The position numbers and the translations under genes are program-made. This document shows positions 3,541 through 62,479 of a stretch of DNA of 64,000 bases, one piece after another (position 1 is the first letter of the stretch; the number at the start of each line of letters is the position of its first letter). The stretch lies in assembly GCA_002269645.1 (NCBI GenBank), contig NIVC01000221.1, positions 62,001 through 126,000 on the forward strand, in the 5' to 3' direction. Under the pieces are notes generated by a model that saw only the letters and a list, made by a program, of their open reading frames with translations, ran no database searches and was not told the origin of the DNA. Source of the stretch: Macrostomum lignano (lineage: Eukaryota).

Positions 3541-4223
3541 GAAAACGCAGCTCTTTGCGAGCTGCATGAGACCTGCGGACCGGAGTCAGCCGACCCAGGA
3601 CTCATACACCTCCTTTTACACCTCCTTTTCCGCTTTCTTTTTCGCTGCCTAAAATAAAGAATTTGAATGCAAACTGCCGACGCCTATTGCGAGCAAAAAG
3701 TACAAAGTGAATAGTAGCTGCTCAGGATCTACTAAGTGTTTACGAATATTTTAATGTCTCTAGTTTAGTACATTTCAGCCTGAATTTTCAGTTCAACCTG
3801 AACAATCTAAGGGGTTCGGTAAGCCCTAATCAATCGAGCGACATCTCGGGACAGTTGACTGACGGGAGCGAACACGCATCCCTAATAATTGAGGAGCGGC
3901 TTATCATCTTCACAGCAGCAATTTTTATCAATCCTAAAACACTACTAAGTTTGATCAAGTTTGCAGAATCGCATTCCAGCTTAAAATTCTTCGCCTTCTT
4001 TTCTTCTTGGTAGTTATCAGTTTTTCATTCGATATTGCCTATCAAGCTTATTAATTAATTTAAAGCCCAAATTGCCCCAATTATCATACTCGTTGTTTGA
4101 TTGACATCAGGCCACATTCATTTTGGGGCTTGTGTACGAAAATTGGCGATTCATACCAACCCACACGCACAGAGAGTGAATAGGCCTGACGATTGCAAAA
4201 TCAGGGCCACCGTAAACCCGTAA

Positions 4224-4289
4224 AGAGCCCACCCCGGGCTGATCCGCGGGTAGCTAAGCTTCCCACCCCCGTTTAACAACAACAAACCC
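4224..4289 (+). mobile_element. 5'-truncated retroposon tail (copy 0 of the SL-like-headed family)
   Basis: agagccc...gggctgatccgcgg...cccaccccgtttaacaacaacaaaccc, flanked by the repeat aaacccgtaaaga (4214-4226 and 4284-4296). Confidence 0.65.
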
Positions 4290-5623
4290 GTAAAGACGGT
4301 CTCTGACTGTTTTTACCCTGGTTGCCTCTCTGGTAGCTTGTCTAAGGGTTGTGCGCAATCCGATTGGCCTAGCTTCGGCTAGCCCAATAACTAAGGGTCC
4401 GCCCCGGAGGGGCTGTGCCCAGTCTAAAAATAACCCTATTCTTTTTTCTTACCAATAGAATTTCGGTCTTCGGCCTTGGTTTAGGGGGGGGGGGTGGTGC
4501 CCGGAGTGAGTTGGATCTCTGGACTGCAGTGTGGCTAGGACGGGACTGAGCCCCCCGGTCGTACCCGCCCTGCAGGAAAGAAAATGACCAACTCACAAAG
4601 GTGAACGGTAGACCCAGTAGACTGCCAGCCCTGAGGCTGAGCACCCGGGTTGCAGGTCGGCAAGCTGCCTGCATTAGGGCTATGGTGCTCCTCCTTCTGC
4701 CAATATTTTTTTCTGGGCTGGCATCCCAGCGCTGTTTTATCCCTAGCTTTGTGCCTTTGTGGCTTTTTATTCTTTTATCTTTTTACCTGGCCATTTAGAT
4801 GCCTCCAATCTTCGGAGTTATGAGCTCTGCCCTCGCCCGGTCCATCTTGCCCTGTCCTCAGGTCCATCTTCTGGCTCCTGCTGAAGGTCCCTGCTTGCGT
4901 GTCTCTGGCTCTCATCCTGACAGTGGATTGGTGTCCTGGGAAGGATGTTCGTCCCGTACCGGGGACTACCGGCTGAGTCCGGAGTCCTCTTGCCCCGGGT
5001 GCCTCTCTCTCCCGACCCCTTGGCCTGGCCCCCAAAACTGAGCTGGATAGGCGATGCCCTTGGGTTGGTAGCAATAGAGGTGTTCTGCTGTCCGCCTAGA
5101 GTCTCCCCCTCGGATACAAGCCTTCCAGACTCACTCCAAAATAGAGCTGGGTAGTGAAAAGCCTTGAGGCTCGAGACCTACAGTTGACCTGTGCTGTATA
5201 GGATCGCTCTTGGTAATTAGCTGCCCAGACTCGCTCCAATAGTTTAAGCCATTTCCGCAGGTTTAGGAATAACTCCTCACTCGGACCGCTTTCTTAGTAG
5301 TATTCCAAGCATTTCGCTTTCCAATTTTTCTGCGCACTCCTAAAGACTCGCTGGCTGGGGGGGGTGGCCTGGGAGGACTCGGTCCTAGCACCGTCCCTGA
5401 TTCCACTTTTGGGGTGGCGGTGTCTTGTACCGTAGGCTTGGGTCAACTTCGCCCACCCGCGCTTTGAGCCGGGTCCAATTCCCTTGTCTCTCGGGGTATC
5501 TCGGGCCCTGAACAGCTAATGTCTTGGCCCCTGGTAGTGCCCCTCGCGGCAGAGCCCTAGCTTGGGCTGATCCGCGGTAGGCCCCTAGGCTTTCCAACCC
5601 CGTTTAACAACAACAACAAACCC
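4288..5623 (+). mobile_element. Non-autonomous retroposon, copy 1 (SL-like head, (AAC)n tail)
   Basis: Begins ccgtaaagacggtctctgactg and ends ccccgtttaacaacaacaacaaaccc. Shares about 190 nt of 5' sequence and about 420 nt of 3' sequence with copy 2. No credible ORF. Confidence 0.65.
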
Positions 5624-5637
5624 AGTGTTTTACCCAG

Positions 5638-6338
5638 CCGTAAAGACGGTCTCTGACTGTTTTTACCCTGGCTGCCTCTCTGGCGGCATTTCTCGGGTTG
5701 TGTGCAATCCAATTGGCCTAGGCTCTCGCTAGCCCAATCCAAAAGTGTCCTCACCGGATGTGATGTACACATCTAAAAATAGCCCAACCTTTCTTTAGTT
5801 CCAATTTGTTGGCCATCGGCCTTGGGTTAGGGGGTGTACCTGGAGTAATTGTGACTGGGTAGTCTTGAGGTCTTGAGCCTTGAGGCTTGCAGCCCTATAG
5901 GGGGTTTTTGCACGGATCCTACTTCTGATAGGAGACTCGCCTTTGGTAAATAAGCTGCCCAGACTCGCTCCAATCTTAAAGCCATTTCTGTAGACTCAGG
6001 TTTCCCGCTCTCGGACCGCTTTCCAGAAATTTTTCAAATTTTTTTAATTCCAATCTTTTTCGCGCTCACTCGAGACTTGTCCTTGGAGGTGGCTTGGGTG
6101 GATCAGTCTTTGCACCGTCCCTGATTCCACTGTTGGGTTGGCGGTGTTCCCATAGGCTTGGGCTAGTAACATCCAATAAGGTTTCTTAGCTAGGCCTAGT
6201 CCTAGCCCCAATCTGGGCCTCTCAGGCTTTATGCCCCTGGTAGTATGGCCCCTACAATATCCAGCGGCAGAGCCCTTCCCTGGTGGGCTGATCCGCGGAA
6301 AGCACACGCTTCCCACCCCGTTTAACAACAACAAACCC
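5638..6338 (+). mobile_element. Non-autonomous retroposon, copy 2 (SL-like head, (AAC)n tail)
   Basis: Same head (gccgtaaagacggtctctgactgtttttaccctgg) and tail as copy 1, shorter interior, many substitutions relative to copy 1. Confidence 0.65.
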
Positions 6339-8016
6339 TGTGTGAGCGTGCGTATCAGAGCGTGCCTGTGTACAGTATTGGCGTGCTTGGATGCGCTCAG
6401 GAGTCTGGGGAACGGGCAGAGTTGCCGTAGAAACTTGTTGTGGGACGCTGTTGCCGACAGCGTTGCACCAGGGTAGCCACAAGCACACAGCGAATAACCA
6501 AATATTTGTTAGCGTCGATGTCAAACAGACCGACCGTAACGCATAATCAATTGAGTCTTAACTATTGATTGTCGTACTGGAATCAGGTTGAAATCTCATG
6601 CGTGCATGTACAATTAAGAGCAAAATGTTTTTACTGACAGAGATTCAAAGGGCATGAATCAGATTTTCAAATTAAGTAATTTGAACACAAGTAATTTTGC
6701 AAATTAGCTATGAAAAGTTTTTGCCTACAAAAGTTTTACTTTTAAAAGTTAATTTAGTCTGGGTTCATTCAACAGAGACAATTATTCTGTGAATAGTGAA
6801 AGAAGCTTCTTCCTTAAACGGTATTTTAACTTGAATTATTGTCGTACAAATGCTGTATTGACAGCTGCCTCTCCTAATGCTGGATGAGTCTTCCACAGAT
6901 CCATTACTTCATTAACAGCCAAAATGCTGGGTAGCCTCTACGCACCTCGTGCATTCTTTCTGTCAAAAATTTAAAACCTTTTTTATCCAGATTGATGGAG
7001 TCTGCCAGTCTTGCTACAAAGATCCCGACTTCCCAAACATTTTAAGCGCTTTTATCTCTCGTTTCGGTAAGCAAAGTCGCTGTGTAATCAGACTTGGCCT
7101 CCGCTCAGGCAGATTCAGTGCAGGATGAAGTCTGCCACAACTTCTGTGGCCAGTGCTTGCTTCTTTGCAGAAGCGGATAAGTCGTGTTTCACCTGGCCCA
7201 GAGACTCGAAGCAGCAAATGCGGCAAATCGAAGCTAATCGTAACTAATGGAAGTTTCAGTGGCTCTGCAAAACTTTACTGCCGTGTATCTGCCGTATCCG
7301 GTACTACATGCAACTATAGATCCAGAAAATTGTTATAAGCTTTAGCATATACACTGAGCTGCTTGAGTTCTTTTGAATTACAATAAGCTAACTCAGTCTT
7401 CAGCTGTGATAGCAAATGCCGATTTTAACCGTAGGCTCCAAAATGAAAAAGAAAACTTTAGTTTCAAAAAGTTGCGCCCTAGGTAAAAGCTTATGTCGCC
7501 TACTTAACCGGAAAGGTATAGTCATTGAAGTCCGTTGCATGTGCGCTTAATTCCAATGTCATGCCAGAGAAGCGTTAAGTCGACACAAGCTATTTCAAAT
7601 TAAAAAGCTTAAGTTTTTAGTGAAAATATTTAAGATAAAAGCTCAAATATCACTTTCCAGAAAAATAATAACACAACTATAACCCTAACTCATTGAAAAT
7701 CTTATCCGGAATTGTCGACTGTGAGCTGTAGTAATTTTCCATCTTAGGTCCAAATTAGCAATCTCAGCTTTACACAGAAAGCAACAATATGCCACGAGGA
7801 TCTGAGCACAACGGACGCATAACTGTTACAGCATTGAGCCAAACTGCTGTGTGCGATTAATTTGCATCGGATTCGTCCAGGATAAAACTAGCGAAATCAC
7901 GCGACCTATGTGATTGGTTGCTGGCCTATTATCCACTGCCAATTGGTTTCCTACTAAGCTATAAACCCGACTAATTCCATTAACAGTAAAATATCCAAAG
8001 TATACTCGTAAAGCAC

Positions 8017-8796
8017 ATGGAGCAGCTATCTCGAATTTCGATTTTACTCGGCGCTCTGCTTACCTGTGCGACCTGCAGGTTTGTCAATTACTCCTACGTG
8101 GGTTGCTACGTGGACTACACGGGCAAGGCCAGAGACTTAGACGGACTGACTGGAGTCACCCAGCTGGGTCCGTTTGAGGTTCGGTCAAACGACCCTTTCA
8201 TAAGAGCAAGCATGACTCTCGAGCTGTGCAGCAGCGCCTGCTCTCTCGGCGGATTCTCGTACTTCGGGGTGCAGGTTGGTCGTGAGTGCTTTTGCGGCAA
8301 CTCAATCGGATCGCAGGGCAAAGGCAATGAGAGCGACTGCAATAAAAAGTGCAGTGGAAACTCGCAGCAAATATGCGGAGGTCCAGCTCGCAACTCGGTG
8401 TTCGCTCTGACCTACCCGAGTAAGTGAAGGGCGATTGATTAATCCATGGTCTGAAATAATTTTCAATCAACTATTTTGCGGTATTTTAAAATTTTTTCAA
8501 GACCTAATGAAAGAGACAGCAGAAAAACCGTGGTTGTTTCGCAAATTTCTATTTTAGACCGTTACTACTTGATTCAGAAGGACAACAGCCTCTTCGTCAA
8601 GACCGACAGCTCCAAAACCTCGTCCTGGCCGGCCGTTGACCAGTCTGTCGCGGACTGCCTGCTCCGATGCAGCGCCAGAGCCGCCTGCCAGGCCGCCGTT
8701 TTTTCGAAGCGGCTGCTCGCCTGCCACCTGCTGGCGTTCGCCTACCCGCCAGCCAGCCTGACCGGACCCGACTGGACTCTCTACCAGCGTGGCTGA
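8017..8796 (+). CDS. Secreted WSC-domain + PAN/Apple-like protein, paralog B (2 exons, 213 aa)
   Basis: Exon 1 8017-8419 (hydrophobic signal peptide; WSC motifs YVGCYVD, MTLELCSSAC, YFGVQVGRECFCGN, C..C..CGG = 8 Cys). GT donor at 8420, tttag acceptor, exon 2 8558-8796 (DCLLRCSARAACQAAVFSKRLLACHL). Phase-1 join keeps the frame (642 nt). Confidence 0.88.
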
Positions 8797-11812: not shown

Positions 11813-14303
11813 GTAGTGACGCATTATAGAAGAAAGTTCCAGGTAACCGAGCTAACAGCATAACCAGTATTTGTGGCCTAGGGCAATTACTCCCTCAGGG
11901 AGTGAGCGAAAGCCGTGCCGTAGCCACTCTTAAATACGTCAGCCTGTGCGCTCAGTTGCCTCGCTGAAGTCATGAGCCCTCGCACCCGTGCCTTGCCTAT
12001 CCTTGCACTTGACAAACTGTACCCTGTTACAGTTAAACTTTGAGGGATTAAATGATAGGAGCTACAAAAACTGGCGTTCCAACAAAGCAGATATCCAACA
12101 CCTTCATCACACTCAAGCACCACTTCCGGTCGCTCTGTCTGGTACACCATAAGTATAGGATAGAGTATAGGGTACTACTTGCATACGTTAATTGGTGAAT
12201 GCTTACATATAGTTAGCGCATAGTCCCTGAGAACTGTTCGAAAGTAAATGACGAGCGTTGAATTCTCATACATTAATATAATGATTGACTGATTATTTTA
12301 TACTGCATGAGAACATGAGAACCATTATTTACTTGATTTCGAGGTCACAGAATCACATCATCAGAAATTATGGTACTATGTTTTGATAAAATGTTTAAAT
12401 TTGTGCTGGGATCGGTGATGTTACTACGAGTAGTGACAAACTTTCTGCTGCTAAAGTCGAAACATTAATTACTCATGGGCGACTATAGTAACATATATGC
12501 TATCTACCGGTATCCACCAGAGGCATAGACGGGGAGCAAGGAGGTTGCAGTCTCCAATAAGCTGAAAAGAAGCTTGGCATCCTTTTTTCGGATATTTTGG
12601 TACAGCACCACTGTTCTCAATTTTAGCATATACACAACAAATATTTGGCTTTCGATCTACCGCTGCTGATGCGTCTCTCGGTGTCGGCGCCCTTTGTTTT
12701 CAGCGCTCTTTGGCACCCCTGTTACGGGCGTCCCTGTTGTAGACGCCTCTAATACTGACACCCTAGCTCTGGCGCCCATGTTGTTGGCGCCTCTATTTAT
12801 GGCGCTGGCGCGAGTTCAGATTCTGAGTGACAAAAAGTAAAAAAAATAAAAAACGACGGGTTCAGAACTAAGAATCTACGAGCGTTACATTGCAGCCCTC
12901 ACTCTTTTCTGGCAAAATGCAACAAAGAACTGCGATTCTGAGTAGTATCTCGTTTTGGATCTAGAACCTACAACCAGACCTATGTAGAACCTACAACCAG
13001 ACCTATGTAGAACCTACAACCAGACATATGTAGAACCTACAACCAGACCTATGTAGAACCTACAACCAGACCTATGTAGAACCTACAACCAGACCTATGT
13101 AGAACCTACAACCAGACCTATGTAGAACCTACAACCAGACCTATGTAGAATCTACAACCAGACCTATGCAGAACCTACAACCAGACCTATGTAGAACCTA
13201 CAACCAGACCTATGTAGAACCTACAACAAGACCTATGTAGAACCTACAACCAGACCTATGTAGAACCTACAACCAGACCTATGTAGAACCTACAACCAGA
13301 CCTATGTAGAACCTACAACCAGACCTATGTAGAACCTACAACCAGACCTATGTAGAACCTACAACAAGACCTATGTAGAACCTACAACCAGATCTATGTA
13401 GAACCTACAACCAGACCTATGTAGAACCTACAACCAGATCTATGCAGAACCTACAACCAGACCTATGTAGAACCTACAACCAGACCTATGTAGAACCTAC
13501 AACCAGACCTATGTAGAACCTACAACCAGATCTATGTAGAACCTACAACCAGACCTATGTAGAACCTACAACCAGACCTATGTAGAACCTACAACCAGAC
13601 CTATGTAGAACCTACAACAAGACCTATGTAGAACCTACAACCAGACCTATGTAGAACCTACAACCAGACCTATGTAGAACCTACAACCAGACCTATGTAG
13701 AACCTACAACCAGACCTATGTAGAACCTACAACCAGACCTATGTAGAACCTACAACCAGACCTATGTAGAACCTACAACCAGACCTATGTAGAACCTACA
13801 ACAAGACCTATGTAGAACCTACAACCAGATCTATGTAGAACCTACAACCAGACCTATGTAGAACCTACAACCAGATCTATGCAGAACCTACAACCAGACC
13901 TATGTAGAACCTACAACCAGACCTATGTAGAACCTACAACCAGACCTATGTAGAACCTACAACCAGATCTATGCAGAACCTACATAACCTATGTAGAACC
14001 TACAACCAGACCTATGTAGAACCTAGAACCAGGTCTATGTAGAACCTACAACAAGACCTATGTAGAACCTACAACCAGACCTATGTAGAACCTACAACCA
14101 GACCTATGTAGAACCTACAACCAGATCTATGCAGAACCTACAACCAGACCTATGTAGAACCTACAACCAGATCTATGTAGAACCTACAACCAGACCTATG
14201 TAGAACCTACAACCAGACCTATGTAGAACCTACAACCAGATCTATGCAGAACCTACATAACCTATGTAGAACCTACAACCAGACCTATGTAGAACCTAGA
14301 ACC
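11806..14303 (+). repeat. Direct duplication, copy 1 (2,498 bp), immediately left of the LINE
   Basis: Starts cagcctggtagtgacg, ends agaacctagaacc. Matches 20085-22582 at constant offset 8279 wherever compared, including satellite variant order. Confidence 0.92.
12962..14303 (+). repeat. 23-bp satellite array (tagaacctacaaccagacctatg)n
   Basis: Direct tandem repeats with occasional variants. Confidence 0.97.
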
Positions 14304-14755
14304 CCGGGTCCTGCACGTAATGGCGTGGTGAACTATCTGTGCAGTATGAGACTGGTATGGCCTTTATCCCAGCCAGCGATGCTCACACCTGCCTCCCCTG
14401 GCGGGCTGATAGCTCAAGAGACTCTGTCTCCTGATTTTCACCTTGCAAGGCGCACTTCGAAGGGTACTCGTCCCGTGGGTGTTAAGGCAGGCCCCCTTGG
14501 GCCCTGCCGAGCTGATTCGTTGGCGCCGGGTCCTGGTGTGACCATAAACGCACCCTCTAATGTCCCAGTGTAACTCCGTGCTGATGGACGCTTGGCCAGG
14601 GAGTAGTCTGGTCGCTAACGGTTCCCCTTGCGCTTTTGGGTCCCCCCGCAGGGTGGTATTTTGCTTTTTGGGGGCCTGCCGCTTGGTTTGGGGTTGCGGC
14701 CTTGCGGCTCTTTGCCTGTTTTCTGCAGGAAGTCCCACCTTTTTACTTCCAGCCA

Positions 14756-16276
14756 ATGGCTTCTAACCGAAGTAACAAACCGGCTGTGGATGACACAGTG
14801 CCTCCGGCCTCGGCTGGGGCCGTGGACTCCTCGGCCATACCACCTGCTACCATCGGGGACGCCTCGGCGAGACCCGTGGAGCCAACTCTGAGCGGTGCCT
14901 CCGAGAAGACACCTGCTACTCCAGCTGCTAAGAAACGCAGCACCACCTCTGGAGCTGCCCGCCGTCGACTTAACAAGGCGAGGCGGGCCAAGGAGGGCGG
15001 AAGCCAAACCGGTGCCAGGGGCCAACGGCCCGCGGCAGCGGAAGCTTCCCAGTCTGGGGCGGTGGCGGAAGAGGGCCTCGAGCCCACGGAAGCCCCTGCC
15101 CAGGATAGGGAGGCCGATGCAGCCGGGAGGGTGGACAGCCCACCTGAAGAAAGCTCCACTGACCCCCGGGCCTCCTACGCTGATGCGGCAAAGAGGCAAC
15201 CGGCGGTTGTCATCCTGGGAAAGGACGCGCGCCTGTCTCCCGATCAGCTGAAGCAGGTGAGAAGTGCCGTTGATGGCCTCCTGTGGAAGCAAACTCTGAA
15301 GGGCACGCCTCTGAACATTCATTCGAATGCGACGAGGGACTCGTGCCTTCTCATTTGGCCCAGTGATGCTGACTCGGGTCGGCGGCTCCTTGAGCTGCTG
15401 CCCGAGCAGAGCTGGGACCTCAACCTAGCCTTCTGCAGAGAGGACGAGCGCCCCCGGACCAAGAGGCATCGAATCTGGGTCCCGGCCAGGAGCGTTGTTA
15501 CCTCTGCTGACGAGCTCCGGAAAGGACTGCTAGCAGTCAACCGGGAGCTTCCCGCCGCGGGCCTAGTGGTGCATGACACCCTTAAGCGCACCGACGGCAC
15601 TGGCTTCACAGCCATCCTGGGGCTGTCGGACGCCTGGATGAGGCGTTATCCACACGGCAGCTTCATCAACGTCGGCCTTTGGAAGCTGCGCATCCGCTCC
15701 TACGAGGCCGACCCTCCCCGTGGCAGTGAGCAGGGCGGGCGGGATGCGGAGGCGGCCGGGGCCGAGGCGCAAGCCTCTGCTCAGACTGCCAAAGCAAACC
15801 GCCCTGCCCGGCAGCACGGCCGCGCGGGCAAAGCTGAGCGCGCTGCTGAGGGCGGAGGCGACCGACGCCCGGCGCGTAGCACCAAGCGGCGCGGCCTGTA
15901 CCAGCGTGCAGCTGAGGCAGTCCGTACCGCCAAAATCTCCCAGCTGAGGCGAGAGGTCGCCGGGACGCCTAGGCGCACCAGTTCGTCCAGGGAGGGTGGG
16001 GACGTCCCAGCTGGGCCCAACCCCTCGGGGCAGGGCCGACTGGAGACGGACCCGCCTGCCCAGGCGGCTGGCTGCTCCAGGGCATTGGGCCAATCTGAGG
16101 CGGAGGACCCCATGGATGGTGGGCAAAGGGCGGCGAACGCTGCCTACTGCCTTCCGGCCAATCGGGGGCCTTTTGCTGAAGAAGAGCCCATGGACACCGG
16201 CGACCCCGACCTGAAGCCGGTGAGCGCCGAGGAGGAGGAGGAACTCCTGGCGGCTGCAAAATCCGATCTGCAATGA
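14756..16276 (+). CDS. LINE ORF1 (gag-like/nucleic-acid-binding protein), about 506 aa
   Basis: First ATG in the 14636-16276 open frame. Basic/low-complexity termini around a folded core. Stop overlaps the ORF2 start (ATGA). No CCHC knuckle seen. Confidence 0.75.
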   Translation: MASNRSNKPAVDDTVPPASAGAVDSSAIPPATIGDASARPVEPTLSGASEKTPATPAAKKRSTTSGAARRRLNKARRAKEGGSQTGARGQRPAAAEASQSGAVAEEGLEPTEAPAQDREADAAGRVDSPPEESSTDPRASYADAAKRQPAVVILGKDARLSPDQLKQVRSAVDGLLWKQTLKGTPLNIHSNATRDSCLLIWPSDADSGRRLLELLPEQSWDLNLAFCREDERPRTKRHRIWVPARSVVTSADELRKGLLAVNRELPAAGLVVHDTLKRTDGTGFTAILGLSDAWMRRYPHGSFINVGLWKLRIRSYEADPPRGSEQGGRDAEAAGAEAQASAQTAKANRPARQHGRAGKAERAAEGGGDRRPARSTKRRGLYQRAAEAVRTAKISQLRREVAGTPRRTSSSREGGDVPAGPNPSGQGRLETDPPAQAAGCSRALGQSEAEDPMDGGQRAANAAYCLPANRGPFAEEEPMDTGDPDLKPVSAEEEEELLAAAKSDLQ

Positions 16277-19200
16277 TGCCAACGACTACCTGGTGTCTGC
16301 AGATCAACACCCAGCACTGCGTGGCGGCGTCGGTCAACCTGATGCGCACGGCAGAGCAACAGCTTCCGGGCCTGGTCTTCGTACAGGAGCCCTGGATGAC
16401 TAAAGGTAAGCCAAATAATGTGCCATCTGGCTACCACTGTTTTTGCATGGCGGGCTCTCAGCCTCGCCCAAGATCTCTGGTCTTTGCTGCAAAAGCTTTT
16501 GAGGCATGGATGAGACCTGATCTCTCGACTGGGGACATCTGTGTTGTTCAAATCAATAACCTCATTCCCAATAAACCTGTGCTGGTAGCTTCTGCCTATT
16601 TCCCGGGCGATGCCCCAGTTGTCTGCGACGCGTTAGTCAACCTTACTGACTATGCTGCGTCCCATCGGTTCGAGCTGCTCATTGCAGGGGATGTGAACGC
16701 ACACCACCTGCATTGGGGCAGCAAGAACATCAATAGCAGAGGCGAGGAGCTGCTGGCCTATGTCAGCAGCACTAACCTCAACTTCTGTAACGTGGGCAAT
16801 GCACCAACGTTCAATAATGGGCGGTGGGCCGAAGTCATCGACACCACCATCGCCTCACCCGGACTGCTTTCCGCAGTTACGGGCTGGCGAGTGTGGGACG
16901 AGGACTCGCTCTCGGACCACCGCTTTATCCGCTTTTGCATTGGGCCGACCAAGCAAAAGCCTAAGGTCACTTGGAGTCGGAACGTCAGAAACACCGATTG
17001 GGCCGCCTTTGGCTCGAAGCTGAGCCGCGGCCTTCGGGATCTTGACCCCCCAGTGACCTCTCTGACTGCCAGGTGGTGGACGATCTCGCCTCCTCCCTGG
17101 GCGGGGCGATCACCACTGCCTTTGAAGCAGCCTGCCCCCTAAAGGCCTATAAAGGCAAGAAATCTGCTCCCTGGTGGAACCCAGAGCTCGGGGCCCTTCG
17201 GCGCCGAGCCAGGACCCTCCAAAGGCGAGCGCTCAAAACCAAAGACCCATCTGACAGAGAGGCCTATACCCGTGCGATCCACGAGTTTAAGGGCCAAGTC
17301 AGAAGGGCCAAGACGGCCAAGTGGCGCCAATATTGCGAAGGGCTTGAGGGCTCTCGCCCCGTAGCCCGCGTGGTTAAGGCACTCACTAATGACCGTTTTT
17401 CTAAACTCTCTGTTGTGAAGAGACCTGACGGCTCGGTCACAGAGAGTTCGGAAGAGACTCTAGAGCTCATGCTCAACAGTTTTTTCCCTAAATCTCCGAC
17501 TCAGCAGGGCCCGCCCGACCACACAGTGGGAGGGCAAGGCCTAGCAAAGTCTATGATCACCAAAGACCGCATTATTAGAGCGGCAAGGTCCTTTAACCCG
17601 TTCAAGGCGCCTGGGCCCGACGGCATCTACCCAGCGTTCTTGCACGAGGCGGTGAAAAACCACCGCTTCCTGGACCTGCTCTGTCGTCTCCTTCGAGCTT
17701 GTATGGAGCTGGGCTATGTACCAGTTGCATGGAGAGAGGCCCGGGTGGTCTTTATCCCCAAGCCTGGAAAGAGCGACTACCAATCGGTGAAGGCCTTCAG
17801 GCCTATCAGCCTCACTTCTTTCTGCCTCAAGCTCCTCGAGAGACTGGTGCTTTGGCGCCTACTTTCGGTCGAGCTGAAGCGCTTCCCACTCTCGCAGAAC
17901 CAGCACGCCTTCCGCGCGGGCAGGTCAACCGAGAGTGCTCTCCATGTCATTGTTGACTTCCTGGAGAGGGCCGTTCTTGGCAGCGGCTTTGCCCTCTCGC
18001 TTTTCCTGGACATTGAGGGGGCCTTCGACAACGTCATCTTCGAGGCCTTTTGCAGAGCCCTGGAATCCAGGGCCACGCACCCTCACCTTGTCCGGTGGAT
18101 CATGTTCATGATCCGAAACCGCACTGTTGTGGCCCACCTGAGCGGCAGCTCTCTTTCGGTGCCTGTCCTGAAAGGGGGCCCCCAGGGCGGCGTTCTCACC
18201 CCCGTTCTCTGGAACATGGTCATGGATGAGTTGCTTTGCAGTGATCTCCACGACCCCATTCTCAAGGTGGGCTATGCCGATGATGTGACCGCGATATGCG
18301 CGGGCCCCTCGGTTGATACCATCAGAGACCTTCTGCAGGGCTTTCTGGGACGAGCGGAGCGTTGGGCAGACCAATGTGGCCTTAGACTCTCAGAGTCGAA
18401 AACCACAGCAGTCATGTTTACCAACAAACTGCTCTGGACCATTAAGCCCCTCACCCTCTATGGAAAGAATATTTCCATGGAGAAGCAGGTCCGCTGCCTG
18501 GGCCTCACTCTGGACCACAGGCTTAACTGGACTCCGCACATTCAAACTAAAGCCAAAAAAGCCCTGGCTGTACTGGCTCAGATCAGGCGCGCCGTGGGCA
18601 CCACCTGGGGGCTCACCCCCAGGAAGCTGTGGTGGATTTACACTGCCATCATCCGCCCCTCGATCAGTTACGCCAGCCTCGTGTGGGCTAGCGGCCTGAG
18701 CGTCAAGAGCAACCTCGACGCTCTCTACAAAATCCAGGGCAGAGCCTGCCGCATGACTATGGGCGCTCCACCCTCTACTCCTTTTGAAGGCATGAATGCC
18801 TTCCTCTGCGCCCCTCCTTTGGATATTTATATCAAAGGAGAGGCGGCGAAGAGCACCCGGCGTCTTCTGGATGCTGGGGTGGCCTTCAAGAAAGTGCGGG
18901 CCTTTAAGAAGCGGTCGCTTATCCCGCACTCTGACCTCTGCCTCAAGGCTCTCGAGGAGTGTGGCGGGCTCAACATCCTCACGGACTCGATCCCAGCCAC
19001 CCTTCTCCTGAGCCAAAGGTATAAGGTCACCATTCAGCCTCGACACGAGGCGAGTGACAGCTGGAGCGACTCTGAAGTCCACTGTTACACTGACGGCTCT
19101 ATGAGGCATGGTCTTTCAGGCTTCGGAGCTTGCGTCTTCTTCAAGGGAGAAGTGGTGTGGAGCTACTCCCAGCACACTGGGCTCAACTCCAGTGTTTTTC

Positions 19201-19976
19201 AGAGCGAGGTGCTTGCCATCAGCTCCTGCGCGGCAGAGCTGCGCCGAAGGCAGCTTAGCGGCCGGAAATTTATTTTTCACTCTGACAGCCAAGCAGCCCT
19301 TCGGGCCCTCTGCCGCAGCACCGCCAGCTCCAGGTCCGTCCTGGACTGCAACACCCAGCTCAACGGGCTTGCGCTAGGCAACCAGGTGGAGCTCAGATGG
19401 ATCCCGGGCCACGCCGGCTTCCTCGGCAACGAGCGCGCTGACCTGCTGGCCAAGGCTGGCTCCGCCGGCGCGCTATTGGGGCCGGGCCCGGGTGCCCCCA
19501 TCCCCGCCTCGGTGATCAATTCCCGCGTTAAGCGCTGGGCTGACTCCGAGCATCTCCGCAGGTGGCACGACACCCGGAATTGTAGGCAATCCCGTGCTGC
19601 CGTCCCCTGTCCCTCTCCTCTCCTGCGTAGAGCCCTCCTCAGGCTCAACCGCAGAGACCTCAGAGCAGTTAGCATGGCCCTCTCCGGGCATGGCTGCTTC
19701 TCTCGCCACCGCTTCCTTCAGGGCCAAGTACCCGAGGAGCGGTGCCCCTTCTGCCGCTCAGGCAGTGAAAACGCCGAGCATTTTATCTGCCACTGCCCGG
19801 TTTTCACCAGGGCCAGGCTTACTCACCTCGGGCCAAACCCGGTTCTCTCCGACGTTTGCAGGCCCGAGAGCATCCCACTGCTCGCCCGGTACCTCAGGGA
19901 CACCGGACGAGCTGATTTCTTCCCCACCGTCGGTGAGGAGGACCGCGCTGCAGGCGAGACCGACGGGTCCCCCTGA
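16273..19976 (+). CDS. LINE ORF2 (APE-RT-RNase H-CCHC), split by one frameshift near 17065-17075
   Basis: 16273-17142 encodes APE (LQIN, VQEPW, GDVNAHH, PTF, IDTT, SDHRFI). 17073-19976 continues with EAACPLK...WW, RT, RNase H and the zinc finger in another frame. Confidence 0.87.
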
Positions 19977-20084
19977 GCGACACCACTTCAACGGAAGTCG
20001 TTGGTCGCCAGGGGCTAGCGGAATGGGCGGTCTCCTCCGCCTCCTCGCTGCATCCGCCGGACGCCCCCTGCAGCTAAGTCAAGT

Positions 20085-22582
20085 CAGCCTGGTAGTGACG
20101 CATTATAGAAGAAAGTTCCAGGTAACCGAGCTAACAGCATAACCAGTATTTGTGGCCTAGGGCAATTACTCCCTCAGGGAGTGAGCGAAAGCCGTGCCGT
20201 AGCCACTCTTAAATACGTCAGCCTGTGCGCTCAGTTGCCTCGCTGAAGTCATGAGCCCTCGCACCCGTGCCTTGCCTATCCTTGCACTTGACAAACTGTA
20301 CCCTGTTACAGTTAAACTTTGAGGGATTAAATGATAGGAGCTACAAAAACTGGCGTTCCAACAAAGCAGATATCCAACACCTTCATCACACTCAAGCACC
20401 ACTTCCGGTCGCTCTGTCTGGTACACCATAAGTATAGGATAGAGTATAGGGTACTACTTGCATACGTTAATTGGTGAATGCTTACATATAGTTAGCGCAT
20501 AGTCCCTGAGAACTGTTCGAAAGTAAATGACGAGCGTTGAATTCTCATACATTAATATAATGATTGACTGATTATTTTATACTGCATGAGAACATGAGAA
20601 CCATTATTTACTTGATTTCGAGGTCACAGAATCACATCATCAGAAATTATGGTACTATGTTTTGATAAAATGTTTAAATTTGTGCTGGGATCGGTGATGT
20701 TACTACGAGTAGTGACAAACTTTCTGCTGCTAAAGTCGAAACATTAATTACTCATGGGCGACTATAGTAACATATATGCTATCTACCGGTATCCACCAGA
20801 GGCATAGACGGGGAGCAAGGAGGTTGCAGTCTCCAATAAGCTGAAAAGAAGCTTGGCATCCTTTTTTCGGATATTTTGGTACAGCACCACTGTTCTCAAT
20901 TTTAGCATATACACAACAAATATTTGGCTTTCGATCTACCGCTGCTGATGCGTCTCTCGGTGTCGGCGCCCTTTGTTTTCAGCGCTCTTTGGCACCCCTG
21001 TTACGGGCGTCCCTGTTGTAGACGCCTCTAATACTGACACCCTAGCTCTGGCGCCCATGTTGTTGGCGCCTCTATTTATGGCGCTGGCGCGAGTTCAGAT
21101 TCTGAGTGACAAAAAGTAAAAAAAATAAAAAACGACGGGTTCAGAACTAAGAATCTACGAGCGTTACATTGCAGCCCTCACTCTTTTCTGGCAAAATGCA
21201 ACAAAGAACTGCGATTCTGAGTAGTATCTCGTTTTGGATCTAGAACCTACAACCAGACCTATGTAGAACCTACAACCAGACCTATGTAGAACCTACAACC
21301 AGACATATGTAGAACCTACAACCAGACCTATGTAGAACCTACAACCAGACCTATGTAGAACCTACAACCAGACCTATGTAGAACCTACAACCAGACCTAT
21401 GTAGAACCTACAACCAGACCTATGTAGAATCTACAACCAGACCTATGCAGAACCTACAACCAGACCTATGTAGAACCTACAACCAGACCTATGTAGAACC
21501 TACAACAAGACCTATGTAGAACCTACAACCAGACCTATGTAGAACCTACAACCAGACCTATGTAGAACCTACAACCAGACCTATGTAGAACCTACAACCA
21601 GACCTATGTAGAACCTACAACCAGACCTATGTAGAACCTACAACAAGACCTATGTAGAACCTACAACCAGATCTATGTAGAACCTACAACCAGACCTATG
21701 TAGAACCTACAACCAGATCTATGCAGAACCTACAACCAGACCTATGTAGAACCTACAACCAGACCTATGTAGAACCTACAACCAGACCTATGTAGAACCT
21801 ACAACCAGATCTATGTAGAACCTACAACCAGACCTATGTAGAACCTACAACCAGACCTATGTAGAACCTACAACCAGACCTATGTAGAACCTACAACAAG
21901 ACCTATGTAGAACCTACAACCAGACCTATGTAGAACCTACAACCAGACCTATGTAGAACCTACAACCAGACCTATGTAGAACCTACAACCAGACCTATGT
22001 AGAACCTACAACCAGACCTATGTAGAACCTACAACCAGACCTATGTAGAACCTACAACCAGACCTATGTAGAACCTACAACAAGACCTATGTAGAACCTA
22101 CAACCAGATCTATGTAGAACCTACAACCAGACCTATGTAGAACCTACAACCAGATCTATGCAGAACCTACAACCAGACCTATGTAGAACCTACAACCAGA
22201 CCTATGTAGAACCTACAACCAGACCTATGTAGAACCTACAACCAGATCTATGCAGAACCTACATAACCTATGTAGAACCTACAACCAGACCTATGTAGAA
22301 CCTAGAACCAGGTCTATGTAGAACCTACAACAAGACCTATGTAGAACCTACAACCAGACCTATGTAGAACCTACAACCAGACCTATGTAGAACCTACAAC
22401 CAGATCTATGCAGAACCTACAACCAGACCTATGTAGAACCTACAACCAGATCTATGTAGAACCTACAACCAGACCTATGTAGAACCTACAACCAGACCTA
22501 TGTAGAACCTACAACCAGATCTATGCAGAACCTACATAACCTATGTAGAACCTACAACCAGACCTATGTAGAACCTAGAACC
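20085..22582 (+). repeat. Direct duplication, copy 2 (2,498 bp), immediately right of the LINE
   Basis: Begins at the last base of the LINE tail (aagtc|agcctgg) and continues into further satellite. Confidence 0.92.
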
Positions 22583-23787
22583 AGGTCTATGTAGAACCTA
22601 CAACAAGACCTATGTAGAACCTACAACCAGACCTATGTAGAACCTACAACCAGACCTATGCAGAACCTACATAACCTATGTAGACCCTACAACCAGACCT
22701 ATGTAGAACCTACAACCAGATCTATGTAGAACCTGCAACCAGACCTATGTAGAACCTACAACCAGACCTATGTAGAACCTACAACCAGACCTATGTAGAA
22801 CCTACAACCAGATCTATGCAGAACCTACATAACCTATGTAGAACCTACAACCAGACCTATGTAGAACCTAGAACCAGGTCTATGTAGAACCTACAACAAG
22901 ACCTATGTAGAACCTACAACCAGACCTATGTAGAACCTACAACCAGACCTATGTAGAACCTACAACCAGACCTATGTAGAACCTACAACCAGACCTATGT
23001 AGAACCTACAACCAGACCTATGTAGAACCTACAACAAGACCTATGTAGAACCTACAACCAGATCTATGTAGAACCTACAACCAGACCTATGTAGAACCTA
23101 CAACCAGATCTATGCAGAACCTACAACCAGACCTATGTAGAACCTACAACCAGACCTATGTAGAACCTACAACCAGACCTATGTAGAACCTACAACCAGA
23201 TCTATGCAGAACCTACATAACCTATGTAGAACCTACAACCAGACCTATGTAGAACCTAGAACCAGGTCTATGTAGAACCTACAACAAGACCTATGTAGAA
23301 CCTACAACCAGACCTATGTAGAACCTACAACCAGACCTATGTAGAACCTACAACCAGATCTATGCAGAACCTACAACCAGACCTATGTAGAACCTACAAC
23401 CAGACCTATGTAGAACCTACAACCAGACCTATGCAGAACCTACAACCAGACCTATGTAGAACCTACAACCAGATCTATGCAGAACCTACATAACCTATGT
23501 AGAACCTACAACCAGACCTATGTAGAACCTAGAACCAGGTCTATGTAGAACCTACAACAAGACCTATGTAGAACCTACAACCAGACCTATGTAGAACCTA
23601 CAACCAGACCTATGCAGAACCTACATAACCTATGTAGACCCTACAACCAGACCTATGTAGAACCTACAACCAGATCTATGTAGAACCTGCAACCAGACCT
23701 ATGTAGAACCTACAACCAGATCTATGTAGAACCTACAACCAGATTTATGTAGAACCTACAACCAGATCTATGTAGAAACTACAACCA
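21241..23787 (+). repeat. 23-bp satellite array (tagaacctacaaccagacctatg)n with higher-order variant blocks
   Basis: Same unit as 12962-14303; interrupted at the right by the LTR-like insert. Confidence 0.97.
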
Positions 23788-30845: not shown

Positions 30846-31042
30846 GTAGAACCAATACCCAGACCTATGCAGAACCAGTACCCAGGCCTATGCAGAACCA
30901 GTACCCAGACCTATGCAGAACCAGTACCCAGGCCTATGCAGAACCAATACCCAGACCTATGCAGAACCAGTATCCAGGCCTATGCAGAACCAATACCCAG
31001 ACCTATGCAGAACTAGTACCCAGACCTATGCAGAACCTACAC
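30846..31042 (+). repeat. Short 23-bp satellite variant (agaaccagtacccagacctatgc)n
   Basis: About 8 units related to the 23-bp satellite. Confidence 0.9.
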
Positions 31043-31544: not shown

Positions 31545-32168
31545 GTTTCTTCTGTTTCCTCTCTCCTCTCTCTTCTCTCCTCTCTTCTCTCATATCTTCC
31601 CTCATCTCTCTTCTCTTTCATCTCTCTTATCTCTTCTCTCTTCTCTCTTCTCTCCTCTCTCCTGTCTCCTCTCTACTTTTCGTTTTCTCTCTCCTCTCCT
31701 CTCTCCTCTCTACTCTTTCGTTTTCTCTCTCCTCTCCTCTCTCCTATCTTCTTTCGTATCTTCCCTCATCTCTCTTCTCTTTCATATCTCTTATCTCATC
31801 TCTTCCCTTTTCTTTTCTCTCTCCTCTCCTCTCTCCTCTCTACTTTTTCGTTTTCTCTCTTCTCCTCTCTCTCCTCTCTCCCCCTCTTCTCTCGTCAATT
31901 CCTTCTCCTCTCTATTCTTTTTCTCTCTTCTCTTAACTCTCTCCTCTCTCCTCTTTCCTCTCTCTCTCCTCTCTCCCCTCTTCTCTCGTCTCTTCTCTCA
32001 CCTCTTTCCTCTCTCTCTTTCTTCTCATCTCTTTTCTTGTTTTATCTCTTCTCTCTCCCCTCGTCACTCGTCTCTTCCCTCACCTCTCTTCTCTCTTGTC
32101 TGCGTTTTTATCTCTCCTTTCTCTTATTTTATCTTTTCTCTCTTATCTCTTCTCGTTTCTCTCTGCTC

Positions 32169-32234
<66 letters not shown>

Positions 32235-33085
32235 TCTCCTCTCCCATCTCTCTTCTCCTCTACTCTCTCCCCTCTTCATTCTCCTATTTCCTCTTCTCTC
32301 TCCCTCTCTCCTCTCTCCTCTAGTCACTGTAATCTCTTCTCTCTTATCTCTCCTCTGTTCTCTCTACTCTCCCATCTCTCGTCTGTTCACCCTCATCTCT
32401 GCTCTCTCATCTGTCATCTTTACTCTCTAATACGTTCTCTCACTTATCTCCTCTGTACTCTTCTCTTTCACCTCTTCTGACTCCTCTCTTTCCTTACTCC
32501 TCTCTTCTTTTCTCTTCCCTCTTCTATACTCTCTCTCCTCTATTATCTTCTCTCGTCTCTCTGCACTCTCCTCTCACCTTTTTCATCTCTCATCTTTACT
32601 CTCTCATCTCTCCTTTCATCTGTCTCATCTCTACAATCTCATCTCTTTCCTCTTTCCTCCTCTTCCCTTTACTCTCTCATCTCTCCTTTCTCCCCTCTTC
32701 TTACACCCCTATCTTATCTCTATCTCTTCTCTTCTCACCCCTTCTCTCACTCTCTTATCTCCTCTCTTTTCTATCCTTTCTACTCTCTCCTCTCTAATCT
32801 CTCCTCTCCTCTTGACCTCTGTCATCTTCTTTCTGCTCTCTCATCTCTACTCTCTTCTCACTCTTCTCTACTCTCCTCTCATCGATCCTCTGTCTCATAT
32901 CTCCCCTCTTCTCACCTTTACTCTTTCCTCTCCCTCCTTTCTCCCCTCCTCTCGCTTCTTCCTCCCTTCTTCTCTGCTCTCTCCTCACCACTTGTCTCTC
33001 CTCTTATCTTCCATGTTTTCTCTTATCCCCGTCTCGCCTCTCCTCTCTTCTAATAGTCTATTCCTTCTCCTTTCCACTCTCATCT
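31545..33085 (+). repeat. About 1.5-kb CT-rich polypyrimidine low-complexity tract including (CT)n
   Basis: Almost exclusively C/T on the + strand; pure (ct)n at about 32173-32230. Confidence 0.95.
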
Positions 33086-35108: not shown

Positions 35109-35289
35109 GTGAGTTGCTCACTATAGCTTTTTACAGAAAACTTGTATTCAAAACGATTGAACAAAAGTCGATGTGTCTACGAAACCTATGTCAGTATACC
35201 GGACACAGTGGCGTACGCAATAATTTTAATTTGAGGGTCCGCAACTCTCAGGGGCGCAAAGAATAGGGGCCCTTGCTGGGCATCCCTGT

Positions 35290-35650
35290 CTCTTCATAGG
35301 TGCCCCCTGCCTCTTGTTGGGCGCCCCTGTCTCTTGGTGGGTGCCCCCTGCCTCTTGTTGGGCGCCCCTGTCTCTTGGTGGGTGCCCCCTGCCTCTTGTT
35401 GGGCGCCCCTGTCTCTTGGTGGGTGCCCCTGTCTCTTGGTGGGCGCCTCTGTCTCTTGGTGGGTGCCCCCTGCCTCTTGTTGGGCGCCCCTGTCTCTTGG
35501 TGGGTGTCCCCTGCCTCTTGTTGGGCGCCCCTGTCTCTTGGTGGGTGTCCCCTGCCTCTTGTTGGGCGTCCCTGTCTCTTGGTGGGTGCCCCCTGCCTCT
35601 TGTTGGGCGCCCCTGTCTCTTGGTGGGTGCCCCTGTCTCTTGGTGAGCGC
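35290..35650 (+). repeat. GC-rich minisatellite (about 20/40-bp units, cccctgcctcttgttgggcgcccctgtctcttggtgggtg)
   Basis: Tandem units; produces spurious ORFs in several frames. Confidence 0.92.
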
Positions 35651-35912
35651 CATTGTCAAGGAAAGTGACGCGACGCCGGTAAGACTTGTTTCAGTTGGAG
35701 CGATAGCAATACAGCGGACTGTTATATTTGCTGAGTAAGTAAAACACACCGAAGAAAATTAGATGCAATTATTTAAATACGAAGTGGTATAAAACTATAT
35801 TTTAGTTATTGATAAAAGTTGGTGTAAAAGTACATTATGTACGCATTGATTTACGCATGAGTGGAGTGCACGCTTGGCACGTTAAGCAGGGCACAGAGTG
35901 AGTTAAAGCTTA

Positions 35913-62460: not shown

Positions 62461-62479
62461 CTGCGGTGGGGTGGAATGA

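What the first reader, a model, noticed from the sequence alone, without database searches (positions are those of the whole stretch)
4214..6338. Non-autonomous retroposon family whose 5' end matches the flatworm spliced-leader head
Seen: two diverged elements (4288-5623, 5638-6338) both begin with ccgtaaagacggtctctgactg, which contains a perfect ccgt-aaag-acgg hairpin, and both end in a conserved stem-loop plus an (AAC)n tail. A third, tail-only copy sits immediately upstream. Knowledge (recalled, must be verified): the Macrostomum lignano SL exon begins CCGTAAAGACGGTCTCTTACTG..., a 21/22 match, and SL-gene-targeting non-LTR elements exist in other phyla (NeSL in nematodes, SLACS/CZAR in trypanosomes). 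Inference: this is either an SL-RNA-derived SINE, or the non-autonomous partner of a retroelement that inserts about 22 nt into SL genes and is transcribed from the SL promoter, carrying the capped SL head to new sites. I know of no description of such a family in flatworms.
Basis: partly seen in the sequence, partly recalled or inferred. Interest (0 to 1): 0.85.

Follow-up and report, generated by a model that had tools for sequence, protein, structure and literature searches.

The report
Flatworm retroposon headed by spliced-leader start
Three non-coding retroposon copies sit head to tail in a Macrostomum flatworm genome, and each begins with the first bases of the worm's spliced-leader RNA, so a mobile element appears to have captured and kept the 5' end of that small nuclear RNA.

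Summary
CCGTAAAGACGGTCTCTGACTG occurs exactly twice in the window (4288, 5638), and three conserved stem-loop plus (AAC)n tails end at 4287, 5623 and 6338. The published Macrostomum SL is CCGTAAAGACGGTCTCTTACTG..., a 21/22 match counted from SL +1. It is identical in three species and in a genomic SL gene I retrieved (L001).

Similarity to the SL RNA stops at nt 22. In the element, nt 23-29 (UUUUUAC) and the T18G change turn the SL start into a 12-bp 5'-terminal hairpin. This is the first of four hairpins in a 101-nt 5' domain, the best-conserved part of the two copies. The "tail-only" copy also starts with head nt 1-9.

None of the three copies lies in an SL gene. They sit in one another's tails. 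Best reading: a non-autonomous, LINE-dependent, Pol II-type retroposon with an SL-RNA-derived head, conceptually like SINEU. The SL-gene-targeting idea is not supported at this locus, and simple trans-splicing does not fit either.

No further copies, no partner LINE and no empty site could be found with the accessible collections. Family size and the function of the head therefore remain untested.

The parts
4210..4217 (+). Extra partial head CCGTAAAC directly upstream of copy T
   Evidence: Read from the sequence. The same 8-mer lies 6 nt upstream of SL +1 in the genomic SL gene (L001:602-609). The match is not significant on its own (p = 0.25).
4218..4287 (+). Copy T: a mini-copy made of head nt 1-9 (CCGTAAAGA) fused to the last ~64 nt of the element through an AGA overlap. 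It carries the stem-loop (4216-4251) and the tail GTTTAACAACAACAAAC.
   Evidence: Homology to A and B starts at AGAGCCC (4224). The preceding bases match the head 9/9 and do not match A or B at that position.
4288..5623 (+). Copy A, 1336 bp, full length, with no coding capacity
   Evidence: No protein relatives were found.
4288..4309 (+). SL-derived segment of A: 21/22 identical to SL exon nt 1-22 (T18G)
4290..4316 (+). 5'-terminal 12-bp hairpin of A (nt 3-14 pair with nt 18-29, two G.U pairs)
   Evidence: -13.2 kcal/mol, z = -5.1. The same stretch of the genuine SL gives -4.1 kcal/mol, z = +0.2.
4288..4388 (+). Structured 101-nt 5' domain of A (four hairpins)
5546..5575 (+). 3' two-tier stem-loop of A (GCGG/CCGC plus AGCCC/GGGCU)
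5606..5623 (+). (AAC)n-ACCC tail of A
5624..5637 (+). 14-nt spacer AGTGTTTTACCCAG between A and B. It resembles head nt 19-33. Its first 5 nt, together with A's tail, form a possible target-site duplication for B.
   Evidence: Read from the sequence. 5606-5628 (AACAACAACAACAAACCCAGTGT) compares with 6324-6343 (AACAACAACAAACCCTGTGT).
5638..6338 (+). Copy B, 701 bp, full-length ends with a shorter middle
5638..5659 (+). SL-derived segment of B, 21/22 identical to SL exon nt 1-22
5638..5738 (+). Structured 101-nt 5' domain of B
6264..6296 (+). 3' two-tier stem-loop of B
6324..6338 (+). (AAC)n-ACCC tail of B

Best explanation
Window 4210-6338 is a head-to-tail array of three copies (T, A, B) of a non-coding retroposon in Macrostomum, most likely M. 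lignano. It would be mobilised in trans by a LINE.

What the sequence shows:
- Each copy ends in a conserved two-tier stem-loop followed by GUUUAAC(AAC)n-ACCC. This is the kind of 3' module that 'stringent' LINE reverse transcriptases recognise.
- Each copy starts exactly where the SL RNA starts.
- In the two full-length copies, SL nt 1-22 (with T18G) is followed by UUUUUAC. This converts the SL start into a 12-bp 5'-terminal hairpin.
- That hairpin is the first of four hairpins in a 101-nt 5' domain. The domain is the best-conserved part of the element and is constrained as plus-strand RNA.

What I infer:
- The SL piece was captured once in an ancestor. Capture was either by the reverse transcriptase switching template onto the abundant, capped SL RNA, or by read-through from an SL gene carrying an insertion.
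- It has been kept because it gives the element RNA a useful 5' end. That could be an initiator or intragenic promoter element for the Pol II SL/snRNA-type machinery, and/or a protected SL-like capped end.
- New copies insert into (AAC)n-rich targets, including the tails of older copies. Alternatively they are strung together by end-to-end template jumping. Either route gives the array.
For: - Exact heads and tails are present far beyond chance.
- The head matches the published SL 21/22 from +1. That SL is invariant in three Macrostomum species and is present in a genomic SL gene.
- A and B are diverged subfamilies. Identity without gaps is 76-83% in the body, 89% over head nt 1-101 and 88% in the tail. 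The longest identical run is the first 34 nt.
- Both share the same junction after nt 22 and the same G18. The fusion was therefore inherited, not remade at each insertion.
- The head domain folds at -40.4 and -39.6 kcal/mol (z = -3.8 and -3.95, 0 of 200 shuffles). The minus strand gives only -27.1 and -31.9 kcal/mol (z = -1.5 and -2.4).
- All 34 predicted pairs are kept in both copies. The 3 stem differences are wobble-compatible, and the other 10 differences fall in 34 unpaired columns (Fisher p = 0.0008).
- G.U pairs exist only on the plus strand.
- There are no coding remnants, no tRNA, and no ribozyme or other Rfam family.
- A T5 run at nt 23-27 argues against Pol III.
- Copy T begins with head nt 1-9.
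- B has a candidate 20-nt target-site duplication.
Against: - Only one locus was seen. No further head or tail was found in the rest of the window or in about 58 kb of other loci (about 41 kb of it M. lignano genome). Nothing was found in the collections that could be scanned. 'Family' and 'mobile' therefore rest on anatomy alone.
- No partner LINE was identified. The only LINE in the window ends in ...CTGCAGCTAAGTCAAGTCA, not in this tail.
- No clean target-site duplication flanks the whole array, and no empty site was found.
- With two sequences there is no double-sided compensatory change.
- The structure was predicted from the same sequences that were then used to test it.
- A promoter or cap function for the head is pure inference.
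- The element shares nothing with the 150 nt upstream of the SL gene.
Confidence: 0.7

Rival explanations
1. SL-gene-targeting retroelement. The family inserts after nt 22 of SL exons, is transcribed from the SL promoter, and carries SL nt 1-22 to new sites. This would be analogous to SLACS/CZAR/NeSL.
For: The head starts exactly at SL +1 and stops at a sharp boundary after nt 22. A single ancestral event of this kind cannot be told apart from template switching.
Against: - None of the three copies lies in an SL gene.
- The window has no second half of the SL exon, and the 3' flanks are unrelated to it.
- The one genomic SL gene I retrieved is intact.
- Both copies have G18 and a hairpin-completing extension. 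A master copy sitting in an SL gene array would be expected to match the SL at that position.
- The elements encode no endonuclease or reverse transcriptase.
Confidence: 0.1
2. Deletion derivatives of an autonomous LINE. A and B would be the 5' UTR plus 3' UTR of an RT-encoding LINE that itself begins with the SL-derived head. They would then be non-autonomous LINEs rather than a SINE-like chimera.
For: A and B share both ends but differ by a ~700-bp middle. T is an even more extreme internal deletion. This pattern is typical of Bov-A-type or NARTc/RIME-type derivatives (PMC4494074; PMC8190864).
Against: No coding remnant is detectable in any frame. The only LINE available for comparison shares neither end.
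Confidence: 0.25
3. Trans-spliced transcript re-integrated. An element RNA received the SL by trans-splicing and was then reverse-transcribed. This is the explanation proposed for partial-leader loci in parasitic flatworms.
For: PMC12582326 reports 597 partial-leader loci next to LTR/LINE elements and offers this explanation.
Against: Trans-splicing adds the whole 44-nt exon ending in ...TTGCATG, and 5' truncation would keep the 3' part of the leader. Here the 5' 22 nt are kept and the 3' 22 nt are absent in both diverged copies. SL nt 22/23 is not a splice donor.
Confidence: 0.05
4. Local tandem duplication, not a mobile element. A single unit duplicated in place, and 'head' and 'tail' are merely unit boundaries.
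For: All three copies are at one locus in the same orientation, and no dispersed copy was seen.
Against: - The array's outer ends coincide with the unit's ends: CCGTAAA.. on the left and (AAC)n-ACCC on the right.
- The junctions differ, with a 2-nt overlap at T/A and a 14-nt spacer at A/B.
- The unit start equals an RNA's +1, and the unit end is a stem-loop plus microsatellite.
- T is a head-plus-tail deletion product, which is hard to obtain by DNA duplication.
Confidence: 0.07
5. A variant SL RNA gene or an SL pseudogene.
For: The first 22 nt match, and the ~100-nt multi-hairpin domain is similar in size to the ~110-nt SL RNA.
Against: - There is no similarity beyond nt 22.
- There is no conserved GU donor: A reads CUG|GUUGCC and B reads CUG|GCUGCC.
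- The only U-rich linker (nt 51-58) is the least conserved stretch of the domain.
- The domain continues without a break into 0.6-1.2 kb of element.
- Only one SL is known in three Macrostomum species.
- The genuine SL gene does not score with the head model.
Confidence: 0.03

Closest known systems
SINEU (SINEs with U1/U2 snRNA-derived heads; Kojima 2015, PMC4494074)
   Same: Short to medium non-coding retroposons. The 5' head derives from a Pol II snRNA-type gene and starts at the RNA's 5' end. The tail is of LINE type. Internal oligo-T runs exclude Pol III. The head is thought to have been acquired by template switching. How they are transcribed is an open question.
   Different: Here the donor is the SL RNA rather than U1 or U2. 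Only 22 nt are taken, and they have been remodelled into a new hairpin. The elements are longer (0.7-1.3 kb). The host is a flatworm rather than a crocodilian. The partner clade is unknown.
SLACS / CZAR / CRE (trypanosomatids) and NeSL-1 (nematodes): SL-gene-specific non-LTR retrotransposons (recalled knowledge)
   Same: Retroelements physically linked to the SL sequence. SLACS-type copies are flanked upstream by the first nucleotides of the SL exon.
   Different: Those are autonomous elements encoding a reverse transcriptase and a restriction-like endonuclease, and they sit inside SL genes with the rest of the exon downstream. The copies here are non-coding, lie outside SL genes and lack the downstream SL half.
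Pr77 hallmark of trypanosomatid L1Tc/ingi, NARTc/RIME and SIDER retroposons (PMC8190864, PMC3383444)
   Same: A conserved 5'-terminal module of ~77-100 nt is shared by elements of different length. In trypanosomatids it is an internal Pol II promoter bound by TBP and SNAP50, the same factors that bind the SL RNA gene promoter. It is the best functional analogy for what the head may do.
   Different: Pr77 has no sequence identity to the SL exon and doubles as an HDV-like ribozyme. No ribozyme was detected here, and promoter activity is untested.
U6-L1 and other snRNA-LINE chimeric retrocopies made by template switching (Buzdin 2002, as cited in PMC4494074)
   Same: A small nuclear RNA's 5' end is fused upstream of a LINE-mobilised sequence. 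This is a plausible origin for the head.
   Different: Those chimeras are independent dead-end events that usually carry the whole snRNA. Here a 22-nt piece is inherited and conserved across diverged subfamilies.
Partial-leader loci next to LTR/LINE elements in parasitic flatworms (PMC12582326)
   Same: Flatworm genomes contain many SL fragments associated with retroelements.
   Different: Those loci were filtered out of the study, not characterised, and attributed to trans-splicing. In the case here it is the 5' half of the leader that is kept, which trans-splicing does not explain.

Membership tests
Non-autonomous non-LTR (LINE-dependent) retroposon | No protein-coding capacity of its own | tested here: met
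   Only short spurious ORFs are present. A six-frame query and the 137-aa ORF found no relatives; may have been weakened by low-complexity words.
Non-autonomous non-LTR (LINE-dependent) retroposon | 3' end with a conserved stem-loop and a simple-repeat tail | tested here: met
   Three copies end in a two-tier stem-loop followed by GTTTAAC(AAC)n-ACCC.
Non-autonomous non-LTR (LINE-dependent) retroposon | Target-site duplications | tested here: inconclusive
   B has a candidate duplication of about 20 nt that includes A's tail (5606-5628 versus 6324-6343, one mismatch). No duplication flanks the whole array.
Non-autonomous non-LTR (LINE-dependent) retroposon | Dispersed multicopy family | not testable with these tools
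   No eukaryotic genome collection could be searched by DNA. There was no copy in the rest of the window or in about 58 kb of other loci. Scans of viral and prokaryotic collections were empty.
Non-autonomous non-LTR (LINE-dependent) retroposon | Autonomous LINE partner sharing the 3' tail | tested here: not met
   The only LINE in the window (about 14304-20088) and its Logan relative L004 end in ...CTGCAGCTAAGTCAAGTCA. A partner elsewhere in the genome could not be searched for.
SINE in the strict sense (Pol III, tRNA/7SL/5S head) | Head derived from a Pol III gene with an internal A/B-box promoter and no early oligo-T terminator | tested here: not met
   No tRNA was found and no Rfam match. 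A T5 run lies at nt 23-27, and longer T runs lie inside A.
SINEU-like retroposon (snRNA-type head) | 5' end derived from a Pol II small nuclear RNA, starting at its +1 | tested here: met
   21/22 identity to SL nt 1-22, starting at +1, in two copies, and 9/9 in the third. Only 22 nt are shared.
SL-gene-specific retrotransposon (SLACS/CZAR/NeSL type) | Inserted within an SL exon, with the rest of the exon downstream | tested here: not met
   CGAAGACTCAATTTATTGCATG is absent from the window even with 3 mismatches. The 3' flanks are unrelated.
SL-gene-specific retrotransposon (SLACS/CZAR/NeSL type) | Encodes a reverse transcriptase and a restriction-like endonuclease | tested here: not met
SL RNA gene | Full leader, GU splice donor, Sm-like site and terminal hairpins | tested here: not met
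   No similarity beyond nt 22. No conserved donor. The genuine SL gene L001 does not match the head model. Rfam cannot serve as a control, because it does not recognise the real Macrostomum SL gene either.
Penelope-like element / retrozyme | Hammerhead ribozyme in the terminal repeat, with a partial tandem arrangement | tested here: not met
   The tandem arrangement is present, but there is no hammerhead (or HDV-like) match at E <= 10.

The most novel reading that the evidence does not exclude
The first 22 nt of the flatworm spliced leader, locked into a 5' hairpin, act as a portable initiator or intragenic promoter and cap determinant. This would let a retroposon be transcribed by the SL/snRNA-type Pol II machinery and carry an SL-like, possibly trimethylguanosine-capped, 5' end. 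The element would then be the founding member of a new class of retroposons with SL-RNA-derived heads, and a natural reporter for which part of the SL gene specifies its transcription start.
Probability: 0.22. Interest if true: 0.8.

Novelty: new variant of a known kind. Interest (0 to 1): 0.55.

Why it matters
- Retroposon heads are known to derive from tRNA, 7SL, 5S and U1/U2 RNAs. I found no description of an SL-RNA-derived head, so this would extend that list.
- If the head works as a promoter or cap module, it would point to the functional core of the flatworm SL gene. Nothing is known about that gene's promoter. It could also give a compact tool for the M. lignano transgenesis community.
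- Many partial-leader loci next to retroelements were set aside in parasitic flatworm genomes and attributed to trans-splicing. This case shows they may include a different phenomenon and deserve re-examination.
- In practice, such copies can confuse SL-based searches for SL genes or trans-splice sites.

Tried and rejected
**Searches for more copies, a partner or an empty site**
- Six-frame concatenated protein query of the element: no hit. It was probably swamped by low-complexity words.
- Exhaustive HMMER search with the 137-aa ORF: only two chance hits to bacterial repeat proteins.
- DNA pattern scans for head, tail and two internal conserved motifs in viral contigs and genome contigs: all empty.
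- M. lignano loci L002 and L003, the Logan LINE contig L004 and the JGI contig L005 contain no copy.
- A covariance model of the head found only the two known heads in 122 kb.
- Paralogous segments in the window and in L003 stop short of the insertion site, so no empty site was found.

**Ideas rejected**
- A whole-SL-RNA origin of the head domain. The ATCCAATT and CCAAT resemblances I noticed are not significant.
- Carry-over of the SL upstream promoter.
- A hammerhead or HDV-like ribozyme, a tRNA head, or any other Rfam family.
- The window's own LINE as the partner.

**Control that failed**
- Rfam does not recognise the true Macrostomum SL RNA gene. Its silence therefore says nothing about SL-likeness.
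Full report
**1.

The 22-mer CCGTAAAGACGGTCTCTGACTG occurs at 4288 and 5638 on the + strand. It occurs nowhere else in the window with up to three mismatches, and none are expected by chance.

Three tails are present. GGGCTGATCCGCGG lies at 4236, 5564 and 6285, and CCCCGTTTAACAACAACAA lies at 4267, 5598 and 6316. These are the only (AAC)n tracts in the window.

Element A (4288-5623) and element B (5638-6338) align in three blocks at 74-79% identity. A carries about 700 extra bases in the middle.

**2. The recalled spliced leader is correct**

- Grudniewska et al. 2016 give the M. lignano leader as CCGTAAAGACGGTCTCTTACTGCGAAGACTCAATTTATTGCATG (PMC5173321).
- M. cliftonense and M. hystrix have the same leader (PMC10468722 supplement).
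- A metagenome contig I retrieved (L001) carries a complete SL RNA gene with this exon. It is followed by GTAAG, a U-rich site and a terminal hairpin.
- The element head therefore matches SL nt 1-22 at 21/22 (T18 to G), counted from SL +1.
- The host is Macrostomum and very probably M. lignano. The window's LINE ORF2 is 100% identical over the matched part (43% of the query) to an M. lignano protein. A neighbouring WSC-domain ORF has M. lignano proteins as its best relatives.

**3. What the head is, and what it is not**

Beyond nt 22 neither copy resembles the SL RNA. Local alignment scores are no better than shuffles, with p = 0.48 and 0.19. The genuine SL gene does not score with a covariance model of the head. 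The sequences upstream of the heads share nothing with the 150 nt upstream of the SL gene.

Instead, nt 23-29 (UUUUUAC) complement nt 3-9, and G18 pairs with C14. SL nt 3-14 thus become the 5' arm of a 12-bp terminal hairpin. It folds at -13.2 kcal/mol (z = -5.1). The same stretch of the real SL gives -4.1 kcal/mol (z = +0.2).

Three further hairpins follow, at nt 34-50, 59-74 and 76-102. Evidence that this domain is a constrained plus-strand RNA:

| Measure | Plus strand | Minus strand |
|---|---|---|
| Fold energy, A / B (kcal/mol) | -40.4 / -39.6 | -27.1 / -31.9 |
| z-score, A / B | -3.8 / -3.95 | -1.5 / -2.4 |

- The domain is 89% identical between A and B, against 76-83% in the body. The first 34 nt are the longest identical run.
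- All 34 predicted pairs are intact in both copies.
- The three differences in stems are wobble-compatible. The other ten differences fall in unpaired columns (Fisher p = 0.0008).
- Several pairs are G.U, which works only in plus-strand RNA.

Caveats: there are only two sequences, there is no double-sided compensatory change, and the structure was derived from the same sequences used to test it.

A T5 run at nt 23-27 and longer T runs inside A argue against Pol III. No tRNA, ribozyme or other Rfam family is present. Rfam also fails to recognise the true SL gene, so it cannot speak to SL-likeness.

**4. The tails**

Each copy folds on its own into the same two-tier stem-loop, a lower GCGG/CCGC stem and an upper AGCCC/GGGCU stem. 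The loops differ in sequence and length (UAGCUU, UUCCCUGGU, ACCCC). Copy T uses different bases for the lower stem. A small second hairpin follows, then GUUUAAC(AAC)n-ACCC. This is the anatomy of a 3' recognition module for a stringent-type LINE reverse transcriptase. That reading is inferred from established SINE/LINE biology.

**5. The upstream copy is not tail-only**

Homology of T to A and B starts at AGAGCCC (4224). The preceding bases are CCGTAAAGA (4218-4226), which equal head nt 1-9 and overlap the body by AGA. They are preceded in turn by another CCGTAAAC (4210-4217).

T is therefore a head-plus-tail mini-copy, as expected from a microhomology-mediated template jump. All three copies begin with the SL start. 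The SL gene itself has CCGTAAAC 6 nt upstream of +1. This may be coincidence.

**6. Arrangement**

- T/A junction: the tail runs into the head with a CC overlap.
- A/B junction: a 14-nt spacer, AGTGTTTTACCCAG, resembles head nt 19-33.
- A's tail plus the next five bases (AACAACAACAACAAACCCAGTGT) recurs after B (AACAACAACAAACCCTGTGT). This is a plausible target-site duplication showing that B inserted into A's tail.
- Two routes explain the array: successive insertion into (AAC)n-rich tails, or end-to-end template jumping in one event.
- None of the copies lies in an SL gene. The second half of the leader is absent from the window.

**7. Interpretation**

The shared junction and shared G18 in two diverged subfamilies mean the SL piece was captured once and inherited.

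- Simple trans-splicing is the explanation offered for 597 partial-leader loci near LTR/LINE elements in parasitic flatworms (PMC12582326). It would leave the 3' half of the leader, not the 5' half.
- Ongoing SL-gene targeting is not supported at this locus.
- The closest concept is SINEU, a group of retroposons with U1/U2-derived heads. They are transcribed by an unknown route and are thought to have arisen by template switching (PMC4494074).
- The closest functional analogy is Pr77 of trypanosomatid retroposons. It is an internal Pol II promoter bound by the same factors that bind the SL promoter (PMC8190864).
- From my own recollection, unverified here, the Ascaris SL sequence is itself an intragenic promoter element (Hannon et al. 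1990). That makes a promoter role for SL nt 1-22 plausible.

**8. What could not be done**

No eukaryotic genome collection was searchable by DNA. Protein-based detours found nothing. About 58 kb of additional loci, about 41 kb of it M. lignano genome, held no copy. Copy number, the partner LINE, true target-site duplications, SL-locus association genome-wide and expression therefore remain open.

**Verdict**

This is a real and well-defined feature. It is most likely a new variant of a known kind, an snRNA-headed non-autonomous retroposon whose head comes from the spliced leader. I rate it moderately high in interest, pending a genome-wide census.

Noticed in passing
window 14304-~20088 (+): A near-full-length LINE with a 546-aa ORF1, APE endonuclease, RT and RNase H is inserted in a 23-nt satellite. 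Its RNase H part is 100% identical to an M. lignano UniRef protein. ORF2 is split into two overlapping frames (16273-17142 and 17073-19976), whereas relatives encode one ~1232-aa protein, so this copy carries a frameshift near 17.1 kb. The 3' end reads ...CTGCAGCTAAGTCAAGTCA, as in the Logan relative L004.
   Followed up: partly
window 12962-14303 and 21241-23787; also 30848-31037: A large 23-nt satellite (TAGAACCTACAACCAGACCTATG) is interrupted by the LINE and by about 1.1 kb of unrelated sequence (20089-21240). A diverged short array lies at 30.8 kb.
   Followed up: no
L001 (JGI metagenome contig Ga0302322_100095745), 602-725: An environmental metagenome contig carries a complete Macrostomum-type SL RNA gene: a 44-nt exon identical to the published SL, a GTAAG donor, AUUUUUAG and a terminal hairpin. 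The 8-mer CCGTAAAC is repeated 6 nt upstream of +1. A complete ORF of about 380 aa lies downstream (1775-2922). Flatworm DNA is therefore present in that metagenome.
   Followed up: partly
window 8017-8796, 43036-43800, 53676-54248, plus fragments at ~3.47, 26.6, 29.4-30.4, 38.8, 46.1, 50.3, 56.4 kb: A cluster of WSC-domain secreted-protein genes and gene fragments, 82-87% alike with M. lignano loci L002 and L003. The SL-headed array lies 1.7 kb upstream of one of them, on the same strand.
   Followed up: partly
window 62038-63987 (-): A 649-aa ORF whose C-terminal part matches Pyr_redox_2 (E = 4e-20). Its N-terminal two-thirds run in frame through a 33/66-nt tandem repeat (62480-63986). It is probably a real oxidoreductase exon extended artificially by the repeat.
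   Followed up: no
window 31557-32986; 35272-35651; 59895-60514; 61008-61957: Several further simple and tandem repeats: a 1.4-kb CT-rich tract, and arrays with 41-nt, 35-nt and 20-nt units. The window is very repeat-rich.
   Followed up: no
window 5226-5247 / 5954-5975 and 5388-5407 / 6116-6135: Two internal blocks are identical between the diverged copies A and B: AGCTGCCCAGACTCGCTCCAAT (22 nt) and GCACCGTCCCTGATTCCACT (20 nt). They may be further functional motifs of the element RNA. Neither occurs in the viral contig collection.
   Followed up: partly
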